Source: Magallana gigas
Lineage: Eukaryota
DNA length: 64,000 bases
Direction: 5' to 3'
NCBI RefSeq assembly: GCF_963853765.1
Contig: NC_088854.1
Location: 54,622,001-54,686,000 of the forward strand
Shown: in pieces, positions 27,689 to 50,736 of the stretch
Position numbering within the stretch: the stretch's first letter is position 1
Layout of the letters: the number at the start of each line of letters is the position of its first letter
Translations under genes and position numbers: made by a program
The notes under the pieces: model-generated
The model's database searches: none
Told to the model about the DNA's origin: nothing
The model's input: the letters and a program-made list of their open reading frames with translations, nothing else

Positions 27689-30600
27689 ATGGGATTACAT
27701 TGGACAACATTTCTATTTCTGGTAACACTTTCTTCCGTGGGTCACGTGATCGCTCTCTCTGTCGAGCCCGACTGTCTCCCGTACGAGCCCCCGGACTCGG
27801 ACAGTGTGTTCCTGGACAGTAATGTAGAACCACCAGGGTAAGAGAAACTAACCACGACAGAATATTGTTCAGAAAAATAACCATGGGAAAACATCGTGAA
27901 TTTTACTGTATTATAAATTGCTGCAATTTAATCTAATTACAAGAACTAAAGTCGTATCCATCAGTTTCATAGTATAAAGGAATTTGTCACCATTTTTAAC
28001 GTTTGGCTCACATTCAAAATAGTGTAACAGAATGAGATAACACTTTAGAGTCAGAGATTTGTGTTGTTTTAAACTTCTTTTAAACTTGTAGTCAAATTAT
28101 TACCGAACGTTTATGCAATATTAAACTGTTGGTGGGTTTTTTCCGCTATCTCTATTGGTTTGAAGAAACTCGTTTTGATTGTAGTATAAACGTGTGTTCA
28201 GTGAACTATACTCGGACCAAGACAGAAGACAGGCCGTGCGCCGGGATCCCCACCTCTAACTGTCCGGTGGACGTGTAAGTATTGCCGATTGTTGAAAGAA
28301 AATCAAACCACAGATACAGCACTTGATAGAAAATAACGCTTCAGCGATAGAAAAGACGATAGAAAATAACATTTCAACGATATAACAGTTATATGAAAAC
28401 AACACTTCACTTGTGGGACAATTGATAGAAAAAAAACACTAATATGTCAGTTGATAGGAAAAAAACGCACGTCTCTGATATGACAGTACATGTAAAATAA
28501 CTATTTATCTATAGAAGATTGAATAAAAAACCGAAACCAATTATAGTACAGCTGACAGAAAATCACATAGTTATTAGAAACACACGTCATAAACAAACAG
28601 AACCGATGGTAAAATATACAAAATATTACATATAAATAATGGAACAATCAACATAAAAATACACTTTAGTGATAAAACAAGTGAAAGAATATAACATTTG
28701 TTGACAGAATAATTGATAAAATATGGGCAACATTTTTGTCTTTAGGTCCAACAAATAATATGTTGTCTTTGTATCCAGTCAACAACTGAATAATATAACA
28801 TTTATAAAACAAAGATAGAAAATCTTCAATCAAAAGAAAGGCGTTTTTAAACTGAGTTATGTTACATTCATATTTATAATATTGCATACTTACTCATAAC
28901 ACCTTATAAAAACCTACTGTCCGATCCAGCAAGAGTATTGTTTGAAGAGAATCCCAATACACAGTTCAAGTGTCTAAGCAAGAGTAAATTGATAGACATA
29001 AAGTGTATTGCTCTGAATGAGAAAGAAGAATCATCATTGATTAAATTGATACTCTTTCTTAGGACGGTAATCTGTCCAAGTTACAAATGTTGTAAAGGGT
29101 ACTCCACAGAGTCGGACGCCGACACAGAATGTCCTGCAGGTACTTTATAATAATATGACAAAAAAACAAGACTTTATCCACATTGAAGTTTATAACCGCA
29201 TCACCGTTAAAAAATATAATTTGTGTGAAATGTGTCGATTTTGCAGCGATTTGTGATGGTCAGATCACAAGTACAGGTGCATGTCAAAATACAGCGGACG
29301 GTGGTCTATACCAGCTGATAAAAGGGACGAGGGTGTTCACGAGTAGTGGGCAATGTAACGAGCCCGAGGTCTGCTCTAATTGTGGCTCGGGCTTTTATGC
29401 AGATGGACCCAAATGCAAAAGTAAAGTATATTTGGTCCTCTTTACTTCATCGGTTACAAAAACGTTGAAACAAGCAATACGTGTATTATTAATGCAAAAA
29501 AATACTTAAGATTAATGATTGTAATACAAATCATATTGAAAATAAGATTATATTCAATGGAAAATAGCTTGAAAACTCACAACTTCAAAAAATGTAAATA
29601 AAGGTATCATTCCATATAATAATATTCAACATGGAATTCTTCTTCATAATTTTAAAATTCATTAGATAAGGAATTGAAGAATCTTGATAAAAAGAATGTT
29701 TTTTGGTGAACAGTCTGTGCAGCCATTGCAAATTGCGAGCATACAGAGTGTTCGAATGGAACCTACACCCAATGTGTTCAATGTGAAGGGACGGTAATTA
29801 ACGCAGTGTACGGGCGAGCCTTGACCCCAGCGGCTGACAACGGTCAATCTTGTCAAGGCAAGACACTTAGAGCAATAAATAACTAAATGTGATGATTTTA
29901 TTGCTAGATGGAAAATACTTGAGAATCTTATTGCAAACTTACAACATGTTTAATATTAATTCTTTTTAATTACCCCCATCTGCTTACTGGTTATAATTGT
30001 CATTTAGAATAAGTGAGAGAGTGAAAGTTTGTGTTCTGTCTTTTCTGTGTTTCTCTTAATTCATCGAACAAATGTACTTGTAATAAAAATAAAGCATTGA
30101 AAAAATATTTTAATAACTAAACTTACTACACTCTATGAATATTTTGTAAAGGCAAGATATTAAGAGCAATATATAACTAACTTACAAACATCTACAATCG
30201 TGAACATCGCGTCAAGACAAGTTTTAAATGTTTATGAATCACTGTTACCCCATCTGAGTTTCCATACGCTTGTAATTGAAATATTTCGTACATCATTTTA
30301 AGTGACATGTTCATGGAGAAGTGACAGCACACGATGCTACCCCGGGACTTGTCAAGATGAGCTAGCAACCAACTGTAACTGCTCCACCGGGTTTAGTGGC
30401 ACGCACTGCGAAAAAAGTAAATACCCTTGGCTCCATATTTGTTTTGTGCTAGTATTTTTTAAAACTTTTGCGTGACTAACGTTTTTCAAACTTTCTAATT
30501 TTTAGTTACGGAACCAGTTTCTGTGACTTATAATGAAGCAGCATTAGAATTTGGAATCAGCACCAGCAAAAATCCTACCGATCCTAATAATGTCACCCAA

Positions 30601-33600
30601 CCACAGCCAACGATATGGGCGAATGAACTGCAGTTTAACACCCTCAAGACCAGGATAACAGCTTCCTGGGTTCCATCGGTAACGCCTCCGGATATTACGA
30701 ACCATTACGTCACAGAGTTCCAAGTTGGTCTTGTAGAGGGCTCCGTCGATTATGAACTCACACAAGGTAGTGCTTGACAATACATCATTAGACATATTTT
30801 GAATTTAAACATTTTAATAATGCACAAATCATGTTGCATCTTTAAGCACTGAAAGGATTACTATATATGGTATGTTTTCTGTAGCATCTGGCCTTTTGGT
30901 GACCGGTACCAAGAGTTGTAGCGACCTCACCGTACTGGCCCCAAAGACGTCCGCTTACACCTGTGAAGTGGACTTTACGTTTGCTAGTTTGTTCAGTCAC
31001 AATGACACGTACGTAGAGAGTATTTCAGTCATTCTATACTGTATAAAAGAGTAAAATCCGTATCAGTTATCAGTGTCATTACCTTAGTTTACTCAATAAA
31101 ATTATCATAAAGATGTAATTTTCAACTAGGTTGAAGTGGTCCTACAAAATGAAAAATGGTGGATTTGTCAAAGTTTTGAATAGAGAAACATCCACTGAAG
31201 ATATATTTTACTACGAAGGACAAGAATCTACGGCTAGTTACATTTACCACTTCGACTCGGTAAAACCAACTTCCGGTAGTGATGAGCCGCTGGTCGCACC
31301 CGACCTTACAAACATGGTAATACTCCTTTCTTCAAACTAGTAAATAAGGTTATCAAAATATAATTGAGTATATACCAGGTCTCGTTCTGATTCCAAATGA
31401 ATATCTGTTGTTCTTAGTCCCTGATTACGATAACGTGGAACAACTGGACAGATGACCTGTCGGGAATATCTCATTTTGAATATGAGCTCACAGATATCGG
31501 ATACGGAACGACAACGCTTGTGAAAAAGGTCTCCAATATCACTGCTGATGTTGAATCGGTATGATACTACTCTTTTCTCATTTCATTAGTGCATACTAAT
31601 TCTGTATGTGAACTTTGTTAAACGCATATTTTTTTTTTCTATTTTCACAGGAAACATTTACAGCTCCTGCTGACGGGCTTTACCAAGTTGTTCTTACATG
31701 CTACGATCTAGCCGGGAATTTTAAGTCTGCCCGACAAATATTTCTCTATGACAGTTCCTCTACAATCGACATCACCCCAGGTCATAAGATTTCTGACTCG
31801 TTGTCCTCCACAAACACTACCCACACGTGGGTCGTCACCCCCGCCACTAGTGTGACGATAGAGTGGGATGGACACTTTGTGAACACCCGCCATAAAAACA
31901 ACCAGTGGCTGACGGGTGTGAAGGCCTATGGTGGGATAGACAAGACTTCTAAATATGAAGACAGTACAGGAGTTATTACAATTAACAGCATTGATCATGA
32001 GGACGGTAAGTGATGAGTACTAAATAAAAAACGTGTTCGAATGGTTTTGAATTTGAAGAATATCTACATTACACAATTCTATCTTTGTCTAGGTATCACT
32101 GATTTTAAAGTAAAATTGGAAGTAAACAAGGACGAAACAACAGTGACGCAACACATTGCAGAGTATTCAGTGTTCAACATCCACAAACAGTCGGAGACAT
32201 TCACAGGAATCACGTGGGGCGATGGAGATCGCATGAAGATAACAGTGACTGCTTTTGACATAATGGGCACGACTCGAGAAGACAATGTTGTACTGTACAA
32301 AGATATGACACCCCCGAATATTACAAATCTATGGCTAACCCAAGATGACGAACTTGGTGTAAATGTGTTTGGTCTGACAGATTTTAATAAAATGACGTAA
32401 GATGTAGTAGAATTTTAAACTCAATTTAGCTCATTATTAATTATATCAATCTGGATGCTACAAACCTGTTTTGTATGTGATATATAACCTTTTTTGCAGC
32501 ATTGAGTGGTCAGCAGAAGATCTACATAGTGGCTTAGATAGTATAACGTGGAGAATATACGATGCAGATGACACCACATTGCAGCATGGAATAGAACATG
32601 TTCCTCCTCAAGGAAATTCAGAGGTTCTTTGCAAACTCCAATTCTAAATTCGTTGATAAACACTGTACTTGTATATGGTTAAAGTCCGGTGTATTAATTC
32701 TATTGTTTGCAACTGCAGAATATGACAGACTGTATCTACAAGTATCAGACAACTGCACGTGGAGCAGATTGTTATTGCACTGCATTTGTTGGTTGCTTCC
32801 ATCGCCATTTTGTTGTCAAACCAACCGTCCCTAGCAACGGTCTTCAGGGTGTCCATGATGCAGATTATTTCATAGAAGTGGTGGCTACCAACAAGGCACA
32901 GCTCCAAACAGTAGCACAGACAAGAGTAAGAACATATAGACTTGTGGATTTTGTTTTCATAAAGGATGGAAACATCTTAACTTTTTGTATACTTATGCTG
33001 TACTTCTGTTGTGTGAATAGATCAGTGTTGATACAACCCCGCCCCATGCAGGGTTCGTTATGGATGGGTCGCTTGGACAAGATGAGGTCGATTACCAGCA
33101 AGGAATGACTCTGCAAGCTCATTGGTCGGGCTTCTTCGACAGAGAAAGTGGCGTTCGCTTCTATCAATATGGTTTCTCCACTGAATGTTTAAAATCTGAA
33201 AACTTTTCTCTCGTTGCCAACAGCAGCACTATTGTAAGTCTTTTTGTATGTAGTACATTTTTCTGAATTGAATTAATTTTTGTACTTATTAATAAAAACA
33301 TTAACGTTTGTGCATGTAAGTTGGATTTTATGTTTCAGGTTAAAACAACCATGTCCAATGATGCAAGCATGACAGTGACATCAGAGGATACTTATTACAT
33401 CACAGTTGTTGCGTACAACGCCGCATTCATGCCCTCAGACCCAGTTTGCTCTGATGGAGTGACCATAGACACAAGTGACTCTCATATCAAAGAATTGTCT
33501 ATTAGTAACGCTCGAGTCAGAGGAGGGTTGGTCGTAGCCTCCGGGGAGTACTGGATGATCTCTGACGACCGATCCAGGAAGAGGATATACAACACAACAA

Positions 33601-36600
33601 GCTGCAGGTTCAATGTCATGCTATAATTTGAAGTTATCTATTCTCAAAGATAATATATTAACAGCTGTTTTCTTAATATTGTTACAGTTCCAAAGCCACC
33701 GCCATTACAGGCTTGGATTTGATTCCCATTGAGAGAGACCCTGATGGTAATATCATGGAGGTTGATGGAGATTCGGTTTGTGCGAGTACAGCAGGTGCCC
33801 CCGCAGATCTGACCCCTGTCCTCTCAAGTGCTACAACGGTGCGGTTTGTATACGTATATAATTCTAAAAAAATAGTTGCATACCTAAAAGAAGTATGCTT
33901 AAAAATAGAAATACTGGTTTAACAAGAGAAATACAATCGTATTATATTTTAGTATCACCTGGATTGGTTAGAAAATGCCGGAAAAAGTGGGATTTATAAC
34001 TTCGAATTCGGAATAGATTCTACCCCAAACAGTGCCAGCCCATCCATTTTGCCGTTTACATCAACTGAACACCACCCTAGCTTCAGACTTCCGGCAAATC
34101 TGCTGCCCCTCAATTCTGAATTTTATTTAACCATCAAAACCATCACCAAAGCAAACAAAGAAAGCATTCAGGTATAGTGGTTATAACAAGGATCGCTCCT
34201 CGAGAATAATTTTCATTGAAAAATGTGTAAGTGTTCATTTCTGTACTTCATTTTTTGAAGAGTGTGAAATGTATCCTGGATGTCACGGCACCAGTTTTTA
34301 CTGGCACAGTGACAGTCTCGATCAGTAGCGACAACAAATACCTCACGGCGTCATGGCTGACAGCAATCACCGATACAGAAGATCCGTTTGAATTAGATAT
34401 AGAATTTGCAATAGGTATGTAACAATATATTTCCAGTTCTACCATAAACTGCAGTAGACAGTAAGCATGACAATTTATTTGGTTTACAACATCACGTTCT
34501 AAATTTAGGAACTGAGGAGTACGGAACACAGATTCAGAAGTTCAGTCCTCTTCAAACTGGAGGAAGTTGTACGTCACTGAGCCCCGCCCTTTGTACAGGT
34601 GTCGCTATAGACTCATTGGACTGGGATCTGCATGGCTTCCACGTGTATTACGTCACTGTCAAGGCTACGAACAGGGCAATGCTGTCTACACAAGCCGTGT
34701 CGCCTCCATATGAACACGGAATACAAAAAGTCACTGCTGGATTAGTGATCGAAATACCACCAGCGGTTAGAAGATACACGAAATTTCAAAAGAATTATCA
34801 ATTTTAGAAACTACGAAATAAAGAAATAAGTATCACTATTAAATAAGTATATTCTTGATTATTCTTATTCTTACAGGATAATAGGCCATACATTCCAGTA
34901 CTGGTAAGATTTACCTGTAACTTTACTGAAATTTGTTATATTTTATGGGCTAATATTTATTGAAAAAAGCATTGTTTTAAAATATTAATTAATGTTATGT
35001 CGTTTAAGGATATTGAGGACATCGATTTTCAAAGCGAGACAGACAAGATTTCTGCGCGGTGGAGAGGTTTTTATCACCCACATTCAAACGTGACTTTCAC
35101 GATGTCGGTTGGCTCCACTAAAGGAGGGACTGATGTGGTGAATGCCCAGAATGTGGGGACTAACACCAAGTACACCCTCACCGGCCTCTCCCTGACCAAC
35201 TTACAAGTAAGAATAAGAGATCTCGCGAACAGTGGGGATGACTTAAGGGGTATTAATAAAAATATATATAATTATTAGAAAATCACAGTGCGTAATTATT
35301 ATATTGAAACCTAGGTATAAAAGCACATAACATCCAACACAGTTTAGACTGTTGACGTCAATAAAATCGTATCTTAAATGTCATAATTGCAAATTATTAT
35401 TCACCATTTGACTTTCCCAATAAGCAAAGTTGAAAAATCAAAACAAATTACGAAATCTTTGTTTTGAAGACGTATTACGTGAGCATCACGGCGTCTACGC
35501 CCTATCAAGATACCACTGTGACGTCAGACGGAGTGACGGTGGTACAGGACAATACACCGCTTTCTTCTGTCACCATTAATGACGGCGTACCATGCACCAT
35601 GAATGGTAAGAAGTTCTAATTTAAATGGAATTGGTTAGATAAACATCTTTGTTTATCAGGTGTTTTGTTTTCCTCAAAATCGATACACTCGTTTTCTCGT
35701 TCTTTTTAGTTGACAACAATATGACGGTCTTTACCCATCATGACGTGGTAGGTTAAAATGACGTCAAAAATCAACGTTTATCATTTAGTTCTTTATAAAA
35801 CATAAAAAAGAAGATATGGTTTGAAATTTACCGTAACAATCTTATCATAGGACAATCGTAAGAAGTGTGAGGATGACATTGACTACCAATCGTCCTTCAC
35901 GACGCTGTCGGCTCACTGGGACATCCCCGCGGGCGAGGACCACTACCTCACCGACGTCTTTATCAAGGTCGAAGTAAAGAATGGAGGTCAGATACTAAGA
36001 ATTGATACAATATTCACCGCTATTGGATAATACTTTGGTTTCATCAATATTCGTTGATTACCAATTTTCGTATGTTCATTGAATGAAGTGCAGGTTCTAA
36101 TTACATAATTATTGTATTTTAAAATAAGATTATTGGCCACGAATTTACCTATCTTCTCATAATTAACAACGAAAAGGAATGTTCACTCATATAATAAAAT
36201 CACAGTATCTTAACAACAGTGTTTTGTCATTTTTTGTCCATTTGGCTGTCGAGATAAGAGAAAAAATAATGAGAGTAATGATATGTTTTTATGGATGTAA
36301 AAATCAAGACTGACTTACATAAATCTATAGGGTCCTGGTCAGGAGTGACACAGTGGGTGTACCTGATGACCCACTACCACCACACCTTCACCGGCCTGAA
36401 CCTCTCTCCGGGCCACACCTACAGGTCCTCCGTCAAATTCTGTGCCAGACTCTTCTGTTTTGTCCCTTTTAATAGCAATGGTGTAACAGTACTGGCTAAT
36501 AACCCTATTACTGGAGCCCTGACTATAAACCACCAAGGTTCCGGAACTGAAACGGTTAGTTGGAAAATTTTACTTGAGATATTTGTTAATAAATGATAAA

Positions 36601-39600
36601 AATGTTGTAATATTTTTGAAAATAAATGAGATACATGTACCTTTTCTCAGCTGGCCATAGAGTTTGATCAGTTTTACGACCCAGATGTTCTTCTCCCTGG
36701 CGATAAATATAATGTAGTTGATAAGTATGAATATGCAGTTGCCGACAATTCAACCAATGGCAACGTGCACACAAGATGGGAGACCATTACTTCTGCTCCT
36801 TCTGGACAAAAGGTACAGTGGAATCTACAACTACTGTATCAACTGTTAAAAATTCCCACTTGTTACTTACAATGTTTTAAGGAAGGAGTCTTTTCTGGTT
36901 TTCGACTTGTCAAACGTAAATTTGATTAATTGTTCGTTAAATCAAGATGAAAGGAAATTAAAATAGTATATTTTTCTTTCTTTTTTACTATCATACAACT
37001 TGGCATAGAAAAATGTAATCAATGTTTAGAATGGAACAAGGACTATATTTTTGGCGTAGGAAAATATCACATGTTGCGCAATTCAGAATTGCTGCAGATT
37101 ATATATATATAATGAGTCTGTTTTATCATTTTAAAAACAATAACAATAATGTTGGATTTTTTTTTACTAATGTGAACTAATAATATGATACTTGGGTTTC
37201 AGAATATGATTTTAAAATATAATTTGCCTATCAAATAACATTTTTATTAGCTTTTTAAAGCGCCCATTCTATACATTGATTTTTGTGAAAAAATCACTAA
37301 AATCAGTTTTTCTCTCTTATGAAACGGTCAATATATTAGCTTTTCTGTCAATTTATATCTTTATATAAAGTCTTCATAATACATAAAAATTAGAAATATT
37401 TTATTATTGGAAGCATAAAAAAATAATCAAAATTTCTTCAAAATTTAAGAAAATTAGAGGAAATGCGGGCTAAGCAATATCAATTTTAGTATAAATATTT
37501 ATTCTAATTTAGTAGTATAAGCTGATAGACACTCTCATGGTCTATGATTTCATTGAAGATTTGAATCTTCAAATCTTAAACAAATGTCTACAGAACTATA
37601 AAGAGCTACACTTATTTTTATCACTCTTTATGTTGAGGAAAAAGGTAGTGACCTTGACCTGACCTTTATCGAAAACAAAAAGGTCAAATTTAATTAAACT
37701 GATAGAATCATTAAGTAATATGATCCGTTTGACTGTGTCAAAATTTCATGCATTTCTTATTATAAGAAGTATGTTTGATAATAAAAAGACTCCTTCCTTA
37801 AGGAGACATTTTTTTATTTTCATTTAGATATCTTTCACGGTGACTCTGACTGGTACAATGGATTTTAGTAAGTGCAGAAACATTGTCATCAGAGGCTATA
37901 ACAAAGCAGGGCTCCATAGCACGGTATCTGCTGGCATCAAAGACTGTGCTCAGTTCAATCCCATTCTGATTGTCCCCAATGTCATCGTAGATGCCGTGGG
38001 TCCCGCTGATCCAGCGGACGGTAACGTACATTCCCGTGCAAATTCAAATTGGTTCATGTGTGTTATTTTGTTTGGGTTTCAATTAAATACATGTTCAGTT
38101 AACCAAATTAAGGTGACGACTTGCAATTTTCAGACAAGAATGGTTTAGGCGTGTCTCTTCCGGAGAATGCCGTTTGGACTGTGGCTGATGCCGACTACAC
38201 GCCATTTCGGACAGTATTATCTGCTGTCTGGCATTCTGGGAGATATTCCTCATATAAGTGGGCCGTTATAGAAGACAGAAGCCCAGAACCAGTCACATAC
38301 AACACACAGACTTCTCCTCTGTCGCTGAGAGACCCTTGCTCCCACGCTGACGTCGTGCATTCCAAATGTGGAACTACGAGTATGCTCTGTGTCAATGGTT
38401 TACTGCATACAGGGTTATTTTCGCCCAGTGTTATTTTCCCTCTTCTTCGCTTGCGAACGGTTTCGCCCCATCTTGAATTCGCCCAAACATAGTTGTTTTG
38501 TTTCAAAGTAGAATAATTTGAGACATTTGAGAATTAGCCCGCTGATAACGAGGGCGAAAGAGGCAAAATTGAAAAAATGACAATAACAAACTGTCAACCA
38601 TCTCAAAAATCCATAAAACGAAATACAAATTCAAAGCAGAGCAACACAGACCTCTAAAAGATAGAGGTATGATCATGTGCCATGGAGGAGTGAGCATCCT
38701 CTGCTGACCTGTCACACCCGCCGTGTGCTCTTTGTCGTAATCGGGAAAAAAATCGGAAAAGTCCGTTGACAATTAGGTGATTAATTATGGTCTAACAATT
38801 AGTATGAAAAATGTCAGCATGCAAAAGTAAAACGGAGGCGAATATTTCCCTGTATACAGTACACATGTATTTTGTGTCACGTATCTTACCATTCGATTAA
38901 TCAATAATGGTTTTAAAATAATATACACTATTTTGCAGCAAATGAATTTGTAAACGTCATTTTCAATGAAAACGAATATTTGGTGCATGGGAAAACCTAC
39001 ATGATATGTATCCATGCCGACGAGGAGAATGTGACCAATGAGCTCTGGACAAACCTTCTACCTGAGCTTAGTGTGTGTACTGACGGGGTGGTCGTGGATC
39101 TCACTAACCCCACAGTGGCAGATGTCTGGCTTGGAAACGTTAAAAATACCAAATACCAGGTAACAAATACTATCAGACTAGTTATTCCGTTGTAGTGAAT
39201 AATACAAAGGCCCATATATCATTTCAGTTGAGACTCTCTTTGATGTTTTCATCTATTTGTAGGTTGCTGCGTCTGACTTTTACGTCAACTGGAAATCGTT
39301 TGTTGACATTGAGGAACTTGGGGTAGGAAAACATCATACGGGCATCAGTTACTACGAAGTCATCATCGGTATGCCCAGTGTTTGGAGCCCATACTCTTTT
39401 TTATATATAGGATCACATAAATGCAAACCATAATATTAACGATTTCCATTCTTAGGATCAACGGAAGGAGGAAATGACGTCGTGGACAACACAAATGTAG
39501 GGGTGGTTAACCACGCCCACTTTGGATCCCTCACCTTGCACTCGGGTCACAAATATTACGCAACAGTCACAGGTATATATATTTATTTATACATTCATCC

Positions 39601-42600
39601 ATATTTGATGCAATATGTGTGTTTTCGAAAACGTTGTTGAATTTTTTTTCAGGATATGATTTTGTTGGAAGAAAAGCCAGTAAAACTTCTGAGTCTGTCA
39701 TTGTGGATTTTACTCCCCCTGTTATCACTGATGAGCCAATCAAACTTAGAACTGGTCGACACATTATATCAACAACTGAAGTTTCTGTTTGGTAACATTT
39801 TAAAACTTTTTGTATCCAATATTTTGCCAAATCTTGCCTAGTTTGACCATAGAAGTAATTTATCATAGCCTTTGTTTATTTTTGCTTTTTATTTCATAGC
39901 TGGTCAAATATTTTCGATGACAAGGAAAGTGGACTTGATTATTTCTTGTGGTCTGTTGGTTCCATGCCGGGATACAATGATATGATGGAATTTAAGAAAG
40001 TTAACGATGTGTGTGCGACGAATGGTCCTTCAACGTTAACCATGGAAGAGGGGCATGCTTATTACATCAACGTTAGAGTAAGTATTGTCGATAGTCATCA
40101 AAAATACATTTTGTTTAGCATACTTACAAGTGTCATGCTTAAATTAAAGTCATTTCGTTCATAGGCTTATAACAAAGCTGGTCTCTCCACTACTGTGACG
40201 TCATGGGCCTTTACTGTGGAGGCCTCGCCTCCAGTTGCTGGTCACGTGTTTGATGGCGACAAATCACAAACCTCAGACCAGAAAGATCTGGATTTTCAAA
40301 CACATTTAGATTATTTATCAGCTTACTGGGAGGGGTTCAATGACCCACATTCTACAATCACAGAATACTACATCAGTATCGGCACGTGCATCCTCTGCCA
40401 GGACGTGCTTCAACATCAGGCATTAGGAATCGTTTACGGTACATATGTTTCATGTTGTTTTTGCAATTGCAATGTTTTCTTTGCATAAACGATATCATTT
40501 TTTTTTCAAGGTAATAATTTGAAAATTTCACAAGTTTCTTATGATATTTAGAATATCGACTTACGGGTATCGGACTAGCCGTCGGAATGACGTATTACAC
40601 GTCAGTTACCGCCTGTAATACAGCAAACCTGTGCACTACCGTGACCTCTGATGGCGTCATCATTGATAATAGTCCGCCAAGTCCAGGGCGTGTGAAGGAT
40701 GGACCTGGAACAGAAGACATTGAGTATCAGGCTTCAAGGTTAAACTTTCTCTTACGAGTCGTTTTATAGTTTGTACTTGGCATGCAATGAGTCTTTCATA
40801 ACATTCTCTTCAATTTGTACGGGTTTTGTTTCCTTACAGATCTCACATTTCAGCATCTTGGAACGGTTTTTCGGACCCACAGTCAGGATTGCAGAAATTC
40901 GTCTGGAAGGCAGGAACCAAACTGGGTGGAAATGATATATTCAATGTGACGTTCCAGCACCTTCATTTGAGCCTGTTTGCGAGAAGCTTACCCCTTCCTG
41001 CCAATCTTCCAGTTGGGGTTAGGATTTATGTAACCGTTGGCTGCTATAATAACGCTGGTATGTAATAAACTTTTTTTTTTAATTTTGAGGTATTTTACGA
41101 TGATCAATCGAGTATAGTACCTCTTAACCACTGTGATACTATGAATGAAAAAATAAATCTTTGGTGTTTTTGATCTATAGGTCTGTATGTGGAATCATCA
41201 TCTAACGGTTTTATCGTGGACGATACTGCTCCTGAGGTCGCCTTAGAGCCCTCTTTTCCCGCCAATATGGTGACGTACGACACTGATACTGACCAGTTTT
41301 ACCAGGTACATAGGACAACGCTCAAAGTGGAATGGCAGACCAGCGATCCAGAATCTTACATCGAACGCCAGTATCTCACTATTAAGTCCCATATTGGGGG
41401 AGAATTTAACAGTGCTCCTACACAGGTACTTGATAATGAAATCGTCATAATTTATATATCAGTTAATCATTATTGTGATTGAAAGATTTAATTGCAGAAA
41501 AAAACCCGAAAAGAGCCTCGCTAGTAGAATCTATGATATATAGATCACTTGAATCCATCATTTCGTCTTATAGATCAACGGAATAGTACGGGACTACACG
41601 TTCAGCGACTTAGACCTGCATGATGGGGTGGAGTACTTCGTGGTACTGATAGCCTGTAATGGAGCGGGACTCTGTTCCAACGCCACCTCCAAACCCCTGC
41701 TGGTGGACAGCACGCCCCCAAACAGAGGTCAGTCTGTAACCTCCATCTCTCAACAGTTTACTAATGAAGACAAGTTAATGTCATCCAAATAGAATATTAT
41801 GACCCCACTATCGATATCCACCTCATCATTGTGGAGTTTGAATCGTCAAAATGCTGGCAAAGATGATTTTACCGTGCGTTTTTGTACAGTGAGAAAAAGT
41901 TCGTCTGCCGTTAACACATGTATAATTAATTTTTCGTTTATAATTCATTTTCTAGGGATGTTTGCCATTCAGACAGACCATGCCGCCAATCTGTCCCGCC
42001 ATGTTGATGGTCACATGACCTGGACGTACAAGAAGACGGTGTCGGTACTGTTGGCGTGGATAGGATTTGATGACAGTCACTCAAATATCCGTCATTACAG
42101 TGTCAACATTGGATCCTCATTCTTTTCATCGGATCTGAATCAAGTACTTAAACAAAACACCAATTACTCTTTCTACATATCAAAATTGTTTCTTCTTTAG
42201 ATGCTTTCTTGATGATATTCGTTTTCTATTGCTCTAGGACCCTGGAATACCATTTGTTATTCCCCATAATAACACCGGTGAAACGAAAGAGAACGAAGGC
42301 ATTGTGCAATCGAGCACTCTTCCTACACAGAGCCTCACAAGGCATACTTTTATATACATCCACATGTGGGCAGAAAACATGGTTAGTGCGTTTCCATAAC
42401 AGTTGCTTCTTAATCCATGTGTCAAGATTGCGGTATTTAATTAAATCCAATCGGTTTATTTATTGTTTCGTAGGCTGGACTGAAGAGCGCCATCATTCAT
42501 TCCAAATTCAAGAAAGAGGCTGGTGGTCCTCTTCACTTAGTTCGGCGTTGTGATGCCTACACGTGTGAAGGTCACTGTACATGCGCAGCCCAGGACGAGA

Positions 42601-45600
42601 GATGTCCAATCAAAGCATCTCTTACATGCGTCAATGACACAGACAGTGAGACTAATTTTGTCTTCTTAATAATCCTTTTAATACTGATATACCTTTTTGT
42701 TATATATTTGTTCATTTCTATGATTTAATGTTATTTCATTTTTAGCTGGTTCACACAGTATTGTCATGGTAACGGACCACATCGGGTTCGGATCCAACGA
42801 CGTAGATTACACGCCTTCAGACACTGTACTGCAAGGTTCTTGGACAATCACGCAGATTCAGAACTACAAGCCTGTCTGGTACTAAACAAGTCAAACTTAA
42901 AACAATTTTGATAAACCAAAGAAGGGGCGAAATTGCAAATTATTTGAAACATTGAATAATAAATGGATAAATTAAGTTTCGATTCGAGCAAAAAAGGTCT
43001 CGCTGTATATATATTCCGATGACGCTGGAATTAAAGAAATTAAAAAAGAACTAGAGTATATTATGTTTATATACTATATATTATGAAACGAATAAAGTAA
43101 ATAATCTTTATTCATTTTGCTTGATAGTTGCCGTCTTCGATTAATTTTTAATGAACAGGTACCAGTGGAGTGTCGGGTATACCAGCGAAGACGCTCCAGA
43201 AGGCGTCTTTGATGCGTCCTCAGAACTCGTTTGGCATGACGCAGCGTCAATCACTCAAATGACCTTCACCACAAAGAAAGGTTTGTTTGCACGATGTTAC
43301 CATCATTAAAAAATCTGTTAGATAAACTTTCTAAAATAATTATTACATTACACTGGAAGATAAACTACTTTGTATCTATATGTTTTTAATGCATTTACTA
43401 GGCAAAAAACTGAAACAAGGAATGAAATACTCATTCTTTGTAAGAGTGTGGTATTCAACAACTGTGTTTGGCGACTTTAAGTCTGATGGGGTGATTGTCA
43501 CAAGTCAACCTCCGATTACAAGAGTACTGAACGGGGCAGCGGTATGTTGTTTTAACAATAAATTAATACAAACAAAGCCTCCTTGTCTTTTCTTTAGAGA
43601 AATTGTCTAAAATGGTTAAAAACTAGTTTTATATTTGGTTTAGGTTACAGAGGTTAGAAGATACAGTAAATTAAGAGACATGGACTTCATCAAGTTTGGT
43701 TCACAAATCACAGTCGATTGGGCCCACAAGTTTGTGAATGCTTCTAATGATGTTTCCAAAATCGAGTTATACGTCAGTACCAGGCCTGGAGGTATAAACA
43801 TTTCTTCATACAAGCAATGCTTGATTTATATAATTTAGTAATGATTTGATAAATTACTAACATAAATATTAATTAATAATACATGCACACATTAGGTCAT
43901 AATATTCACTCGGAGGCGACCAGGTTGGGTTCTTCTGACACAAGCTTCAATATTCTGACTATGGATGGTAGAAGTGGGGTGCGGTACTACAGCAATGTTA
44001 TTGCCTACACCCATTCTGGTATACACCGTACGGAGTCCTCTGACGGGTTTGTCCTTGATTCCGATCCACCAATAGAAGGGGTCGTCTACGACGGTCCAGG
44101 TGACGTCAACTATCTATTTTTCCTATCAAAAAGTGGTATCCCAATATATGTGAAACTTTTGTATGCATGAACTATTACATTGTGTATTCAGGTATCACTT
44201 AATATTGATCGATCTCCTAATGTTAAGATGCTGCGTTTATGACTTTTTAAAGAAATGGAGGATAGAATAGAGATAGAAAATATTATCAGCGCAAAGTAAG
44301 GTAACAATTTCAAAATATTTCGCAGGGCTGAAAGATTTACAGTTCCAAGATTCTGACTCTACTGTCTCCGCTCACTGGCACGGTTTTATTGACCTGGTCT
44401 CTGGCATAAGATGGTACCACTGGTGTGTGGGTTCCACCTCCGCGTTGTCTGGCCCTGCTTGCGATGTGGTGTCTTGGAGGAATGTAGGCCTCCATACCAG
44501 AATGACATTACAGCTGTCAACCACTCTTCCAAGTAAGACTGGCTGGCTTTGTGAACACTGTCCTGAGTTACTAGTATAAGTCAAATTTACTAGACGTATT
44601 ATTTTATATTTACGCATATTTACTATCCACGTAAGATTATATAAGTTGTTGATATATATGAATTATAAAAGTTTGATTTTTCAGGATTACAAGATTGATA
44701 TTCGTAGTCCTACAGAAATCCTACATCACAAAATTGATTTCTATTTCTTTTTTTTTCAACTTTGTAGGGTGTGTGTATAACAAGGTGTATGCCACTGATG
44801 TAGTAGGATTTAACTCCCCTGTGGCTGTATCCAATGGTTACTGTTCCGACACTACGTCACCAGTTCCTTTGTATCTGGCAACTCTGGAACACAATATTGT
44901 TGTAAATGGCGCCTTCAACACATATAAACATAGTGTCAAATTTACGGACTTGAACACGACAGACATTTGTGATGGGACCAATAATATCGGGGTCCCCGGG
45001 TGGTCCCTTCAGCCCGATGCTTGTGCCGTTGTTGTGGAATCAAGTTTATCCCAGACTGAAAACTTTTTCATCCACGTGCGTGGTGGGGTTCAGCAAGAAG
45101 TGTCACTCTCCCCAGGCTTACACAGACTAACTTTTGTTTCTAGTCACGTGCATATTAACGCTGCAAGAACTACAAACCGAGAGGGATTTGCATCACTTGG
45201 TGTACAGCGCCACATTTTCATATTGTACACAAAACCATACCGCCAAGATGGGCATAGTTTAGAATCAGAAAGAAAGATAGTGTCGTGGCATAATCATACA
45301 TTCTACTTCAATGTCACTATAGAGGGAATGTATGACCTTGTGTTAGGGTCGGTAGGTCATCATAGTGGGCTCTATATTGATGACGTTAGGTTACAGTTGG
45401 TGAATACAAGTGACGTAACTGGTTTGGTCAGCAATGACACAGTTCACGGTCATACTACCTTTTTGCACGAGTGGTCTTCTGTACATGCAGGATGGAGCTT
45501 CTATAATCCAGGACCAAGTCCAATTACAAACTATATGTGGGCTATTGGTATGTGAAAAAAATCATTCAGATTAAATTTTGTTTACTGCGTAAAATGTTTG

Positions 45601-47452
45601 TCTGATCTTGTTTTAGTATTGCTTATTTTTCTGCTTTTAGGTTTCTCTCACGGTGGAATTCAGATTCAAAATTTTAAAAGCACTGGTTTAGTTCCATTTG
45701 GTTCTAAGAACGATGTGACATTGGTACACAATGCCTCGGTATATTATACAGTCATAGCGAGTAATGCAGTCGGGAAAATGGCCGTATCGTATTCGGGGAG
45801 AATTCTTGTTGATTTGACCCCTCCACTAATACCAGAAGTCAATGATGGACGAGGTAAGCGGAAATATTTGTTTGTTTGGTTTTTTTTTCTTTTGTTAATG
45901 TTAATTTATGATTTATTAATGAATCATCAATTATAATCTCAAAAGGTCATACTAAAGATGTTTATCTCATAAAGGTCCCGATGAAGATTTCAGTGGAATC
46001 AGCACAGTGTTCGTGAACTGGGAGGCTAATGACCCAGAGTCTGGAATAAGAATATGTGAATGGGCAGTTGGTAAGTGGGTGTTTTATAGGGAATTCAAAT
46101 GTATATCTATTTATGTATTTAGTTTTTCCCTGCCCTAGTATTTTTATTGACAGTCGTAATTTTGATCCTTCGAATTTTGGCACAATTTCCAAAACTTCAA
46201 TAAGTTAGATGTGTATTCAAAAAATTACGAACAATACAACATGTAATATTCAAAAAATTCTTTACAAATTCACAAACTTGTACATTTTTTATTATCTCTA
46301 AAATTTTCAAAATGGCACACAGATTTGTTGTAGAAATATAATTCTGCTATTTGCTGTACTGTTCAGGTTATTCGCCAGAATCTTCTGACCTGAAGAAGTT
46401 TAGCGTTATGACGACGTACTCCGGATACATTGACGTCAATTTCACGGACACGGAGAACAACACTATCTACAGCACTGTCCGATGCACGAATCACGCAGGG
46501 CTTATCACGTACGCTTACTCCGACGGAATAAAGATCTCTCAAAATGCACCAAACTCATCCAACGTTCAAATTAGTCACGTGGCTCTGTCTCAGACCGAAT
46601 ATTCTCCATCCGACGGATTTCAAGGGGTTTCCGATTCCCTGCGATTGTATTGGTCTGGATTTGATGACACTTTTGGAATAAGCTCCCATAAAGTAAGATC
46701 CATGACTGACTTGTAATTACATGTATCTAAGCTAAGATCTCTTTTTCCGGATTATTAAATTGTATGTTTAAATTCATACTATTATTCTCAGATGGAGATC
46801 GATTTTGACAAGTCGGAGGATGACCTGTTCACAACCATGACATTTGCACAGAATCAGACGGTGCAGTACGTACACCTTAGCAAGCTCGCCATGAAAGATG
46901 GTGTTCAAAGGGTCAAGGTCAATACGAAAAATGCTCTTGGAATATCAAGCGAACACGTTTTTTACAATGTTTCGTTATATACTTTGCCTCCAGTCAGGAA
47001 CAGTAAGTGGAAAAGCCATGTAGCTATAATAAATATTATATTTAGGTATTCTCGTTAAAACTTTCGGATTTGTTTGTTTGTTTTATTTTGTAGGGGGTGT
47101 GGCTTTGTACCTGAAATAATGATAAGGTACGGTAATGATGTATTGGCTTCATTTTTTAATAGATAGTTTCAATCCAAAAGTGACTTGGAATGCGGCGACC
47201 CAGAAGTTTAGTGCTTCGTGGCCTGATGTATTTTTCTCTCCTCACCCTCTAAGGTTTGAGGTCTCTGCTGGTTTAGCTGAGGGTGGAGCCGAAATTTTAC
47301 AATGGGCGGAAACGTTGAACACCACACTGGAGTTTGAAATGCCCAAAAGCATAACAGACTTTAGAGGATATGACGTTTTTGTTTATATCCGGGCAATTAC
47401 AGTTGGAGGGTTTTACACTGGTGTGAAAGGAAAAGTGAAATTGCCGTCGTAA
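27689..47452 (+). CDS. giant secreted multidomain protein (~3,428 aa): signal peptide, EMI-like, Cys-rich/EGF, FN3/Ig-like array, galactose-binding-like domain
   Basis: 54 exons assembled by eye: 27689-27837, 28185-28274, 29063-29139, 29247-29420, 29714-29857, 30303-30416, 30506-30766, 30885-31008, 31130-31316, 31418-31558, 31651-32005, 32093-32396, 32500-32623, 32719-32925, 33021-33233, 33339-33607, 33688-33838, 33953-34171, 34261-34414, 34509-34765, 34877-34903, 35009-35206, 35470-35605, 35710-35747, 35851-35986, 36331-36554, 36651-36812, 37828-38020, 38134-38379, 38939-39159, 39263-39368, 39456-39572, 39653-39791, 39900-40077, 40165-40438, 40552-40738, 40840-41057, 41181-41425, 41574-41727, 41956-42143, 42238-42381, 42474-42645, 42746-42878, 43159-43280, 43402-43541, 43644-43791, 43896-44099, 44326-44532, 44768-45547, 45641-45853, 45975-46070, 46367-46692, 46792-47002, 47163-47452. 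Summed length is 10,287 nt (divisible by 3), and phases are consistent where checked. Confidence 0.85.
28321..28620. repeat. degenerate minisatellite (gatagaaaataac-like units) in intron 2 of the giant gene
   Basis: Repeated tgatagaaaataac / gatagaaaagac / tgatagaaaaaaaac / tgataggaaaaaaac units at irregular spacing. Confidence 0.55.
38540..38770. mobile_element. interspersed repeat fragment, probably Penelope-associated terminal repeat
   Basis: gagcaacacagacctct..gaggtatgatcatgtgccatggaggagtgagcatcctctgctgacctgtcacacccgccgtg resembles a very common bivalve repeat recalled as PLE-linked. Class is from memory and unverified. Confidence 0.4.
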
Positions 47453-50322: not shown

Positions 50323-50736
50323 CATAGGCGTCGGAAGCAAATTGAAAGTGGGGGGGCTAGACTAATCCTCAGAAATATTGAGAAAAAAGTAATTCCCAAA
50401 ATCATGGAAATCCTAATCCGTGGGGGGGGGGGGGGGGGGGGGGGGTAGGTATGCCTATACTTCCAGAAAAAAAAAACAATTACTTACCCAAATTTTTTTT
50501 TTCCAAAATCATGAAATTCCTAATCCGTGGAGGGGGGGGGGGGGGGGGGGGCTTATCTAACTTCTCAATCTTTCAAGGTAAATTAGGAACGATAATCTTT
50601 CCTGCGAAAAAAGTGGGGGGGGGGGGGGGGGGGCTGAACCCTTTATCATGCTATGTTTCTAATGGTTAGGTATAACTTTGCAAAAAAAAGTGGGGGGGCT
50701 AAGCCCCCCCTAGCCCCCCCGGTTCCGACGCCTATG
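50323..50736. mobile_element. poly-G MITE with 14-bp perfect TIR upstream of NOP58
   Basis: CATAGGCGTCGGAA / TTCCGACGCCTATG; TATAA on both sides; internal duplication aatcatg(g/a)aa(a/t)tcctaatccgtgg. Confidence 0.75.

What the first reader, a model, noticed from the sequence alone, without database searches (positions are those of the whole stretch)
27689..47452. Uncharacterised ~375-kDa secreted EMI-EGF-(FN3-like)n-lectin-like protein
The model has a signal peptide (MGLHWTTFLFLVTLSSVGHVIA), an EMI-like start (GINVCSVNYTR..C..C..VICPSYKCCKGY), CxxC-rich and EGF modules (CNCSTGFSGTHCE), then well over ten beta-sandwich repeats. The repeats share an acidic linker and core: DG..D+D(F/Y)Q....+SA.W.GF.D..SG+..Y.+.+G. 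There is no TM or GPI tail. EMI+EGF heads occur in Nimrod/Draper/MEGF10 phagocytic receptors and EMILINs, and the D-x-D linkers suggest a Ca2+-stiffened rod. A secreted extended opsonin, mucus or shell-matrix scaffold is plausible. I know no described function for this architecture.
Basis: partly seen in the sequence, partly recalled or inferred. Interest (0 to 1): 0.72.

Follow-up and report, generated by a model that had tools for sequence, protein, structure and literature searches.

The report
Giant secreted FN3-rod protein with sugar-binding module
This oyster gene encodes a real, transcribed, roughly 376-kDa secreted protein: a cysteine-rich head, about 26 fibronectin-III-type modules and a carbohydrate-binding-type domain near the tail. 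It belongs to an uncharacterised family found in molluscs, annelids, nemerteans, echinoderms, hemichordates and amphioxus.

Summary
A 54-exon gene on the + strand (27689-47452) encodes 3,424 aa (376 kDa), with a signal peptide and no TM or GPI tail. RNA contigs confirm at least 15 GT..AG junctions. One 9.9-kb contig would, by my model, run from about exon 9 to past the stop.

- **Repeats:** 22 copies of a ~108-aa module are detected. They are true FN3 domains (profile against contactin-2 FN3, E 1.4e-5; the AF2 tandem pair has pLDDT 95).
- **"Lectin-like" domain:** this is a DUF642/CBM4-type jelly roll. Foldseek finds CBM4-2, CBM16 and CBM22, and Arabidopsis DUF642 proteins, at E about 1e-6. 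Pfam DUF642 hits 22 of 40 family domains.
- **EGF:** supported by the cysteine pattern and sub-threshold HMM hits.
- **EMI:** only weakly suggested.

The protein is not an orphan. It aligns end to end at 33-45% identity with ~3,400-aa "uncharacterized" proteins of bivalves, abalone, sea stars and amphioxus. Further full-length relatives occur in nemerteans, annelids, hemichordates and other echinoderms. This genome holds at least 10 paralogues, and the window copy is the divergent one. The same FN3 module fills giant bacterial surface proteins.

No characterised orthologue or paper was found. The most likely mechanism is inferred: a long extracellular rod, probably Ca2+-stabilised, that presents a glycan-binding module. 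The scan had noted nothing comparable elsewhere in this genome.

The parts
27689..47452 (+). Whole coding region: 54 exons, 10,275-nt CDS, 3,424 aa
   Evidence: Splice-aware model. It aligns end to end with 12 homologues. RNA junctions confirm 40165-46072.
27689..27754 (+). Signal peptide (aa 1-22); first ATG of the open frame
   Evidence: Read directly from the sequence. Hydrophobic core TTFLFLVTLSSVG with a V-I-A cleavage motif. No SignalP was run.
28185..29139 (+). Two exons (28185-28274, 29063-29139) encoding the EMI-like Cys-rich segment ending in CCKGY
   Evidence: The Cys pattern is conserved in the family head alignment A2. The profile match to the N-terminal regions of TGFBIp and periostin is weak, E~0.1. 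No Pfam EMI hit.
29247..29857 (+). Two exons (29247-29420, 29714-29857) of further Cys-rich head; the second probably ends at a GC donor (29858-29859)
   Evidence: Invariant cysteines in A2. The GC-donor choice keeps the conserved C-x3-C before CSWRS. Not confirmed by reads.
30303..30416 (+). EGF-like module (CSWRSDSTRCYPGTC...CNCSTGFSGTHCE)
   Evidence: Six-Cys EGF spacing. Sub-threshold Pfam hEGF, EGF_2 and EGF_Teneurin hits in family heads. Profile against TGF-alpha and factor IX EGF gives E 0.024-0.2.
30506..31271 (+). Conserved post-EGF region (aa ~250-425) of unassigned fold
   Evidence: Conserved in alignment A5. No assignment for this stretch from PDB, Pfam or the Atlas.
31272..44850 (+). 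FN3-type module array, part 1 (repeats 1-18, aa 426-2815), with a short Cys-rich insert at 42519-42750
   Evidence: jackhmmer. Repeat profile against FN3 of contactin-2, E 1.4e-5. AF2 tandem pair and tandem-FN3 structural matches.
44768..45547 (+). Single 780-nt exon: end of repeat 18, DUF642/CBM4-like jelly roll (core about 44851-45400), start of repeat 19
   Evidence: AF2 pLDDT 82.8. Foldseek PDB finds CBM4-2, CBM16, CBM22 and CBM70 at E about 1e-6. AFDB Swiss-Prot finds Arabidopsis DUF642 proteins. Pfam DUF642 hits 22/40 family domains. RNA confirms both exon borders.
45403..47449 (+). FN3-type module array, part 2 (repeats 19-22) up to the stop codon at 47450-47452
   Evidence: jackhmmer. 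The C-terminus aligns to the last residue of the homologues.
40165..46072 (+). Stretch whose splicing is confirmed by RNA contigs
   Evidence: 15 listed GT..AG joints in four runs. One 9,890-nt contig continues 4,547 nt upstream and 1,816 nt downstream of the pieces listed for this stretch.

Best explanation
The gene encodes a secreted, glycosylated ~376-kDa extracellular protein that works as a long rod carrying a glycan-binding module.

- **Head:** a Cys-rich N-terminal head (EMI-like segment, further Cys-rich segments, one EGF) is probably the anchoring or assembly end.
- **Rod:** about 26 FN3-type modules form a rod of roughly 100 nm. This is my estimate from about 3.5-4 nm per module. The inter-module junctions carry conserved Asp/Asn residues and are probably stabilised by Ca2+.
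- **Binding module:** four modules from the C-terminus sits a DUF642/CBM4-type jelly roll that most likely binds a polysaccharide or glycan.
- **Proposed role:** the protein would tether or cross-link carbohydrate polymers at a distance from the surface or matrix that holds the head. Candidates are mucus or apical matrix, chitinous material, or microbial and algal glycans.

Shown here: gene structure, transcription, secretory features, domain folds, the family and its distribution. Inferred: glycan binding, Ca2+ rigidity, the head's role and the biological setting.
For: **Gene and transcript**
- Spliced RNA contigs confirm the junctions, and one contig covers about 87% of the CDS if my upstream model is right.
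- The protein has a signal peptide, 38 N-x-S/T sequons, 73 Cys, pI 5.0 and no TM.

**Rod**
- The repeat profile hits solved FN3 domains (contactin-2 at E 1.4e-5).
- The AF2 two-module model has pLDDT 94.9 and pTM 0.81, which points to a defined junction.
- Its best structural neighbours are tandem FN3 pairs.
- Among two-domain superpositions, the Ca2+-binding giant adhesin SiiE fits with the lowest rmsd: Z 10.1, 3.3 A over 180 residues.
- Acidic or amide residues are conserved at repeat positions 9, 19, 38, 58, 92, 103 and 108 across 350 repeats. By FN3 topology (established knowledge), most of these sit in the N-terminal linker, the BC and FG loops and the module's C-terminal end, and so at the junction.

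**Glycan-binding module**
- The jelly-roll model matches CBM4-2, CBM16, CBM22, the hyaluronan-binding CBM70 and Arabidopsis DUF642 proteins.
- Pfam DUF642 hits 22 of 40 family domains, best E 5.9e-7.
- The domain starts with NIVVNGAFN, which from my memory resembles the start of CBM4_9 and DUF642 modules.

**Conservation**
- Every family member tested has 21-23 modules, the same C-terminus and the jelly roll in the same place. This argues that the length and the position of the module matter.
Against: - No binding, Ca2+ or localisation data exist.
- The window's own jelly-roll sequence gets no Pfam DUF642 hit at E<=0.1. Membership is by homology to family members that do.
- The CBM-type fold is also used for non-lectin roles. 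HpiC1 cyclases and Cry protoxin domains are among the matches.
- Structural matches are at TM 0.4-0.6.
- SiiE is only one of many similar-scoring two-domain hits, and ordinary FN3 arrays such as titin need no Ca2+.
- No tissue of expression is known.
Confidence: 0.55

Rival explanations
1. It is a soluble pattern-recognition molecule or opsonin. The jelly roll recognises microbial or algal polysaccharides, and the head or rod is recognised by haemocytes. The gene family diversifies to follow targets.
For: This genome has at least 10 paralogues, several in tandem clusters of near-identical copies on C5, C6 and C9. The window copy sits on a long branch (0.93 changes per site). The protein has a CBM-type domain and is secreted without an anchor.
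Against: No expression or infection data were obtained. The architecture is rigidly conserved from molluscs to amphioxus, which suits a structural role better than an arms race. Nothing shows a haemocyte-binding part.
Confidence: 0.2
2. It is a purely structural matrix protein of shell or periostracum, cuticle or basal lamina. The jelly roll mediates protein-protein contacts or matrix assembly rather than sugar binding.
For: FN3 arrays and EGF and EMI-like heads are typical of ECM proteins, and tandem FN3 proteins are the closest structures. The CBM-type fold has non-lectin uses (HpiC1 and Cry domains).
Against: The family occurs in shell-less animals (amphioxus, sea stars, acorn worms, nemerteans), so a shell-specific role cannot be ancestral. 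The shell-proteome papers that my literature search returned were not opened.
Confidence: 0.12
3. It is a gamete or egg-coat recognition protein of broadcast spawners.
For: The only support is circumstantial. Most taxa in the hit lists are marine animals that, from my own knowledge, are largely free-spawning. There are lineage-specific duplications and one fast-evolving copy.
Against: No gonad expression data were obtained. The family also occurs in freshwater mussels and Pomacea. No ZP, REJ or other gamete-recognition domains were found.
Confidence: 0.05
4. It is an artefact: two or more genes wrongly joined, or a decaying pseudogene.
For: The 5' 12 kb of the model is not covered by the reads I could lay. 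Two very short exons and one GC donor are model-dependent.
Against: There is one open frame of 3,424 codons. It is colinear with full-length homologues from N-terminal head to last residue, with no missing or extra block of 8 aa or more downstream of the signal-peptide region. A single RNA contig of 9,890 nt contains the laid stretch and more on both sides. The RNA shows no indels.
Confidence: 0.03

Closest known systems
The orthologous or paralogous '~3,400-aa uncharacterized protein' family (e.g. Saccostrea echinata LOC133189645, Ostrea edulis LOC125647098, Mytilus, Haliotis, Patiria and Acanthaster, Branchiostoma floridae LOC118405866)
   Same: End-to-end alignment at 33-45% identity. The same head, 21-23 detected FN3 modules, the jelly roll in the same position and the same C-terminus.
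   Different: None is a close orthologue. The window copy lies outside the oyster+Pinctada clade that holds this genome's other nine copies. No member has a described function.
Plant DUF642 cell-wall proteins (Arabidopsis BIIDXI, TEEBE, DGR1/2) and bacterial CBM4, CBM16 and CBM22 modules
   Same: The jelly-roll fold (Foldseek E about 1e-6). Pfam DUF642 and CBM_4_9 hits in family members.
   Different: By the hit lengths, the plant proteins are about 370 aa and the matched part is their C-terminal half. The bacterial CBMs mostly sit in glycoside hydrolases. Here a single module is embedded in a 3,424-aa FN3 rod with no catalytic domain. Identity is only 12-16%.
Giant bacterial surface proteins built from the same FN3 module (Acidimicrobiia MAG protein P0168, Schekmanbacteria P0169, P0170, P0245)
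   Same: The same ~105-aa module, including the P-x-x-G-x-V-x-D-G...D-x-x-Y-Q linker and the W-x-G-F-x-D-x-x-S-G motif. Each bacterial copy scores 80-112 bits with the animal repeat HMM, with 18-25 copies per protein.
   Different: The bacterial arrays are near-identical copies, without the Cys-rich head, the EGF or the jelly roll. The direction and age of any transfer were not tested.
Ca2+-stiffened bacterial adhesins (Salmonella SiiE; Marinomonas MpIBP from memory)
   Same: A long rod of ~100-aa beta-sandwich modules with acidic junctions. SiiE superposes on the two-module model at Z 10.1 and rmsd 3.3 A over 180 residues. From memory, MpIBP has a sugar-binding module near the distal end.
   Different: Their modules are named BIg, not FN3, and they use a different secretion route. 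No sequence relationship was shown. This is an analogy of mechanism, not membership.
Animal FN3-array and EMI/EGF matrix proteins (contactins, neogenin, pikachurin, titin; EMILINs, TGFBIp, periostin, MEGF10/Draper)
   Same: FN3 domains. An EGF-like module and an EMI-like Cys pattern.
   Different: None of them combines these with a DUF642/CBM module. There is no TM, gC1q, FAS1 or EGF array here. No vertebrate or arthropod protein appears among the 179 rows of the two full-length searches.

Membership tests
Fibronectin type III (PF00041) | Sequence profile similarity to bona fide FN3 domains | tested here: met
   The repeat profile A3 hits contactin-2 FN3 at E 1.4e-5, and also contactin-1 and -4, fibronectin and monobodies. 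Pfam fn3 scores above cut-off in homologues (48 bits against 25). Single window exons gave no fn3 hit, because the exons cut through the modules.
Fibronectin type III (PF00041) | Seven-strand beta-sandwich, tandem arrangement | tested here: met
   AF2 model of two modules of the closest homologue (P0109:1972-2190): pLDDT 94.9, all-beta. Top Foldseek and VIA hits are tandem FN3 pairs. The window's own spliced sequence could not be submitted.
DUF642 (PF04862) / CBM4-like galactose-binding-like jelly roll | Pfam HMM match | tested here: inconclusive
   The window domain gets no hit at E<=0.1. 22 of 40 aligned family domains hit DUF642, best 5.9e-7. P0042 scores 26.5 bits against a cut-off of 27. 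Precomputed PF04862 is listed for several orthologues. The window domain scores 273 bits with the family-domain HMM.
DUF642 (PF04862) / CBM4-like galactose-binding-like jelly roll | Beta-jelly-roll fold like solved CBMs and DUF642 models | tested here: met
   AF2 pLDDT 82.8. CBM4-2 at E 1e-6 with TM(target) 0.62, plus CBM16, CBM22 and CBM70. Arabidopsis DUF642 proteins at E about 1e-6.
DUF642 (PF04862) / CBM4-like galactose-binding-like jelly roll | Carbohydrate binding | not testable with these tools
   Needs glycan arrays or pull-downs with the recombinant domain.
EMI domain (PF07546) | Pfam HMM match | tested here: not met
   No EMI hit in any of 12 family heads at E<=5, nor in whole homologues.
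EMI domain (PF07546) | Cys pattern ending in CC-x-G-(Y/W), and similarity to solved EMI domains | tested here: inconclusive
   The pattern is present and partly conserved. The profile matches the N-terminal regions of TGFBIp and periostin only at E 0.1-0.2. The window version is shorter than in most homologues.
EGF-like domain | Six-Cys spacing with C-x-C and G-(F/Y)-x-G before the last Cys; HMM match | tested here: inconclusive
   The pattern is met: C214, 223, 228, 236, 238 and 247 with CSTGFSGTHC. HMM hits are all below the curated cut-offs: hEGF 19.4 against 29.3, EGF_2 14.5 against 22.1. PDB TGF-alpha EGF at E 0.024.
Nimrod/Draper/MEGF10 phagocytic receptors | Transmembrane receptor with an EMI domain followed by an array of EGF/NIM repeats | tested here: not met
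   There is no TM anywhere. There is one clear EGF module and then FN3 modules.
Ca2+-stiffened repeat adhesins (SiiE/MpIBP type) | Conserved acidic residues at every inter-module junction | tested here: met
   D/E/N make up 56-96% at repeat positions 9, 19, 38, 58, 92, 103 and 108 across 350 repeats, and similar shares in the window's 22.
Ca2+-stiffened repeat adhesins (SiiE/MpIBP type) | Ca2+ bound at junctions, rigidity dependent on Ca2+ | not testable with these tools
   Only indirect signs: pTM 0.81 for the pair and an SiiE-like arrangement with rmsd 3.3 A.

The most novel reading that the evidence does not exclude
This is an ancient bilaterian family, lost or unrecognisable in vertebrates and ecdysozoans. 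Its members would be the animal counterpart of bacterial long-reach adhesins: a Ca2+-stiffened rod built from an FN3 module shared with giant bacterial surface proteins. The rod would carry a functional DUF642/CBM-type polysaccharide-binding domain, which to my knowledge has no described function in animals. It would serve to capture or organise glycans at mucociliary or other external surfaces. In oysters the family has expanded to at least 10 genes.
Probability: 0.3. Interest if true: 0.75.

Novelty: new variant of a known kind. Interest (0 to 1): 0.55.

Why it matters
Several invertebrate phyla keep multiple copies of a ~3,400-aa secreted protein whose module count and order are almost unchanged since before protostomes and deuterostomes split. 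None of these proteins has a name, a paper or a function.

The family places a DUF642/CBM-type module in an animal extracellular protein. I know this fold from plant cell-wall proteins and microbial glycan-degrading enzymes. The rod is built from an FN3 module that also makes up giant bacterial surface proteins.

If the module binds glycans, the family would be a new class of animal lectin or matrix organiser. It could bear on mucus, feeding, biofouling, host-microbe contact or biomineral scaffolds in aquaculture species. It would also be a clean case for studying how animals and bacteria share building blocks for long extracellular rods.

Tried and rejected
**Pfam on window exons**
- Ten single window exons gave only noise, because exons cut across modules.

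**Earlier gene models**
- Model 1, without homology, missed exons.
- Model 2, with a strong homology bonus, ran exons into introns: only 10 of 15 RNA junctions were recovered.
- Model 3 dropped exons 2 and 5.
- Parameters were then tuned on the RNA junctions (14 of 15). The junctions were forced, and the head was fixed by hand from homologues.
- One search was an empty script, and one search was a mis-specified range.

**Searches that found nothing**
- The PDB sequence search with the jelly-roll profile had no hit at E<=1. Only fold comparison worked.
- The post-EGF region (aa ~250-425) could not be assigned. The A5 profile covering aa ~253-680 gave no PDB hit and only weak Big_3_2 in Pfam, further downstream. 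The Atlas leads for the first part scored below 0.9 with few shared features.
- Literature searches were DUF642 with oyster or FN3, DUF642 with metazoa, and six LOC identifiers of homologues. They found nothing on this family. An oyster single-nucleus atlas mentions FN3 genes only generically.
- Earlier notes of this scan hold nothing comparable.

**Readings considered and rejected**
- Sea-urchin hyalin or HYR repeats were considered from memory. They were dropped because no HYR hit appeared in any Pfam scan.
- The automatic names 'SCARF2' and 'ADGRL2' on two Branchiostoma lanceolatum homologues are probably annotation artefacts of the EGF and lectin parts, not evidence of orthology.
- Three intronless JGI 'hypothetical proteins' with the full animal architecture (P0243, P0251, P0253) looked like bacterial homologues. 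They are more probably metatranscriptome cDNAs of animals.

**Not done**
- No protein-protein complex prediction was run, because the report claims no specific protein pair.
- The window's own spliced protein could not be given to the fold or search tools, as it has no reference. Homologue ranges and single exons were used instead.

Full report
**1. Is it there?**

The window has no N and has the composition of an invertebrate genome. RNA and DNA runs that hold the stretch are labelled as oyster.

I built a splice-aware gene model and tuned it on junctions seen in RNA. I then corrected the head by comparison with homologues.

The final model has 54 exons, a 10,275-nt CDS and 3,424 aa. That gives 376 kDa, pI 5.0, 38 N-x-S/T sequons and 73 Cys.

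**2. Is it one transcribed gene?**

Contigs of four RNA runs laid on 40165-46164 skip 15 listed introns, plus one inferred from loose ends. All are GT..AG, at exactly the modelled borders, with no indels.

One contig of 9,890 nt holds this stretch plus 4,547 nt upstream and 1,816 nt downstream. By my model that is from about exon 9 (window ~31273) to ~890 nt past the stop.

The first eight exons are supported only by homology. Twelve full-length homologues align from the head to the very last residue. No block of 8 aa or more is missing or extra, apart from 17 residues around the signal peptide.

The least certain details are these:
- the short exons 34877-34903 and 35710-35747;
- the GC donor at 29858, which I chose because it keeps a family-invariant cysteine.

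**3. What are the parts?**

*Head (aa 23-250).* The family alignment shows about 22 invariant positions, mostly Cys.
- The last module has the six-Cys EGF spacing. It gets sub-threshold EGF hits and matches TGF-alpha EGF at E 0.024.
- The first segment ends in CC-x-G-Y like an EMI domain. It gets no Pfam EMI hit. It matches the N-terminal regions of TGFBIp and periostin only at E~0.1. EMI is therefore a lead, not a finding.

*Post-EGF region.* About 175 residues after the EGF (aa ~250-425) are conserved but could not be assigned.

*Repeats.* jackhmmer finds 22 copies of a ~108-aa module in the window protein and 21-23 in each of 15 homologues. Gaps between them leave room for four or five more divergent sandwiches.
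- The repeat profile hits solved FN3 domains, with contactin-2 at E 1.4e-5.
- An AF2 model of two consecutive modules of the closest homologue has pLDDT 94.9 and pTM 0.81.
- Foldseek returns tandem FN3 pairs: neogenin, pikachurin, titin and L1CAM.
- By VIA-align, titin A77-A78 leads (Z 11.8). The Ca2+-binding adhesin SiiE superposes over both modules with the lowest rmsd (Z 10.1, 3.3 A over 180 residues).

*Junctions.* D/E/N are conserved at seven repeat positions. By FN3 topology, most of them sit in the linker, the BC and FG loops and the end of the G strand. They therefore crowd the junction between modules.

*Jelly roll.* The 780-nt exon 44768-45547 encodes the end of repeat 18, a ~175-aa insert and the start of repeat 19.
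- Its AF2 model (pLDDT 82.8) matches CBM4-2, CBM16, CBM22 and the hyaluronan-binding CBM70 (E about 1e-6, TM by target ~0.6).
- In AFDB Swiss-Prot the top hits are Arabidopsis DUF642 proteins.
- Pfam DUF642 hits 22 of 40 aligned family domains, but not the window's own copy.
- ESM-Atlas features also pointed to CBM_4_9 and MAM-type sandwiches.

"Lectin-like" is thus right, and can be sharpened to DUF642/CBM4-like.

**4. Relatives**

phmmer with the jelly-roll exon found 91 cluster representatives. Two full-length searches listed about 110 animal proteins of about 1,650-3,660 aa. Named members come from:
- bivalves: oysters, mussels, scallops, clams, unionids, Solemya, Pinctada;
- gastropods: Haliotis, Lottia, Pomacea, Batillaria;
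- a nemertean and an annelid;
- sea stars, a brittle star and a crinoid;
- two hemichordates and amphioxus.

A sea-anemone protein is a more distant relative with a different plan. No vertebrate, tunicate, arthropod or nematode protein appears. These searches are word-seeded and capped, so absence is not proven.

All names are "uncharacterized" or "hypothetical", or are automatic labels. No paper was found.

The window's own genome (564 Mb, 29 contigs) has at least 10 intact copies of the jelly-roll exon: one on C2 (this gene), four on C5, two on C6 and three on C9.

In a maximum-likelihood tree of the domain, nine of them fall with Pinctada and other oysters' copies in well-supported subgroups. 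Some are near-identical tandem copies. The window copy sits outside that clade on a long branch, with one unnamed metagenome fragment. It is 33-45% identical to the 12 aligned full-length homologues and has no close orthologue among the hits.

**5. Bacterial connection**

The same module, linker motif included, fills giant bacterial proteins: an Acidimicrobiia MAG, Schekmanbacteria and others. These hold 18-25 near-identical copies that score 80-112 bits each with the animal repeat HMM. They lack the head and the jelly roll.

The module also occurs in other animal architectures, with VWA, sushi, C-type lectin, SRCR or cadherin-like domains. Whether this reflects transfer, and in which direction, was not tested.

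**6. How it most likely works**

Shown:
- the product is secreted, glycosylatable and very long;
- its module number and order are held constant across phyla;
- it has a CBM-type domain four modules from the C-terminus.

Inferred:
- the FN3 array is a rod of roughly 100 nm, made stiff by Ca2+ at acidic junctions;
- the jelly roll binds a polysaccharide or glycan;
- the Cys-rich head anchors or assembles the molecule.

In effect it would be a long-reach glycan tether or cross-linker. That is the design of bacterial adhesins such as SiiE, and of CBM-plus-FN3 arrangements in cellulolytic enzymes; CbhA FN3-like modules are a VIA hit at Z 10.7.

I give this mechanism about 0.55. The biological setting stays open among apical matrix or mucus, immune recognition, structural matrix and gamete coat. 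Gene-family expansion favours an environment-facing role. The rigid conservation favours a structural one.

**7. Verdict**

EMI is weak, and the Draper-type kinship is not supported.

The gene is a divergent member of a widespread but unstudied family. I rate it a new variant of a known kind: an FN3-array extracellular protein with a CBM/DUF642 module. Interest is moderate to high.

Noticed in passing
window 20594-21106 (+): An open segment of 171 aa matches the PIF/Harbinger-type DDE transposase domain (DDE_Tnp_4, E 1.8e-27). It is a transposon remnant or a domesticated copy upstream of the gene.
   Followed up: partly
window 25337-25561 (+): A short open segment has a weak guanylate-kinase-domain match (E 0.001, below the cut-off). 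It may be the last exon of a MAGUK-type gene that ends just upstream.
   Followed up: partly
window 52067-54920 (+): The downstream neighbour is a NOP56/NOP58-type gene. The Nop domain scores E 1.5e-16 in exon 54444-54617.
   Followed up: partly
window 50393-50551 (+); similar poly-G/poly-C tracts around 22509-23609: Two direct copies of a 52-nt unit end in runs of 20 or more G, 107 nt apart. G/C homopolymer-rich open segments also occur upstream of the gene. This may be a repeat family; it was not examined.
   Followed up: no
window 29858-29859: There is a probable GC-AG intron (CAAG|GCAAGA). It was chosen over a weak GT donor 15 nt upstream because it retains a cysteine that is invariant in the family. 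It needs cDNA confirmation.
   Followed up: partly
G000 C5:35.29-35.43 Mb, C9:2.88-2.93 Mb, C6:30.26-30.33 Mb (loci L003-L010): Paralogues of this gene form tandem clusters. Some copies have almost identical jelly-roll exons, with branch lengths of 0.003-0.04. This points to recent duplication or gene conversion.
   Followed up: partly
proteins P0168, P0169, P0170, P0245 (bacterial MAGs and metagenome contigs): Giant bacterial proteins consist of 18-25 near-identical copies of the same FN3 module as the animal family, conserved linker motif included. The origin of the shared module is unexplained.
   Followed up: partly
proteins P0243, P0251, P0253 (JGI contigs of 9.5-21 kb): These intronless contigs encode N-terminally truncated proteins with the complete animal architecture, including the jelly roll four modules from the end. 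They are probably metatranscriptome cDNAs of unidentified marine animals.
   Followed up: partly
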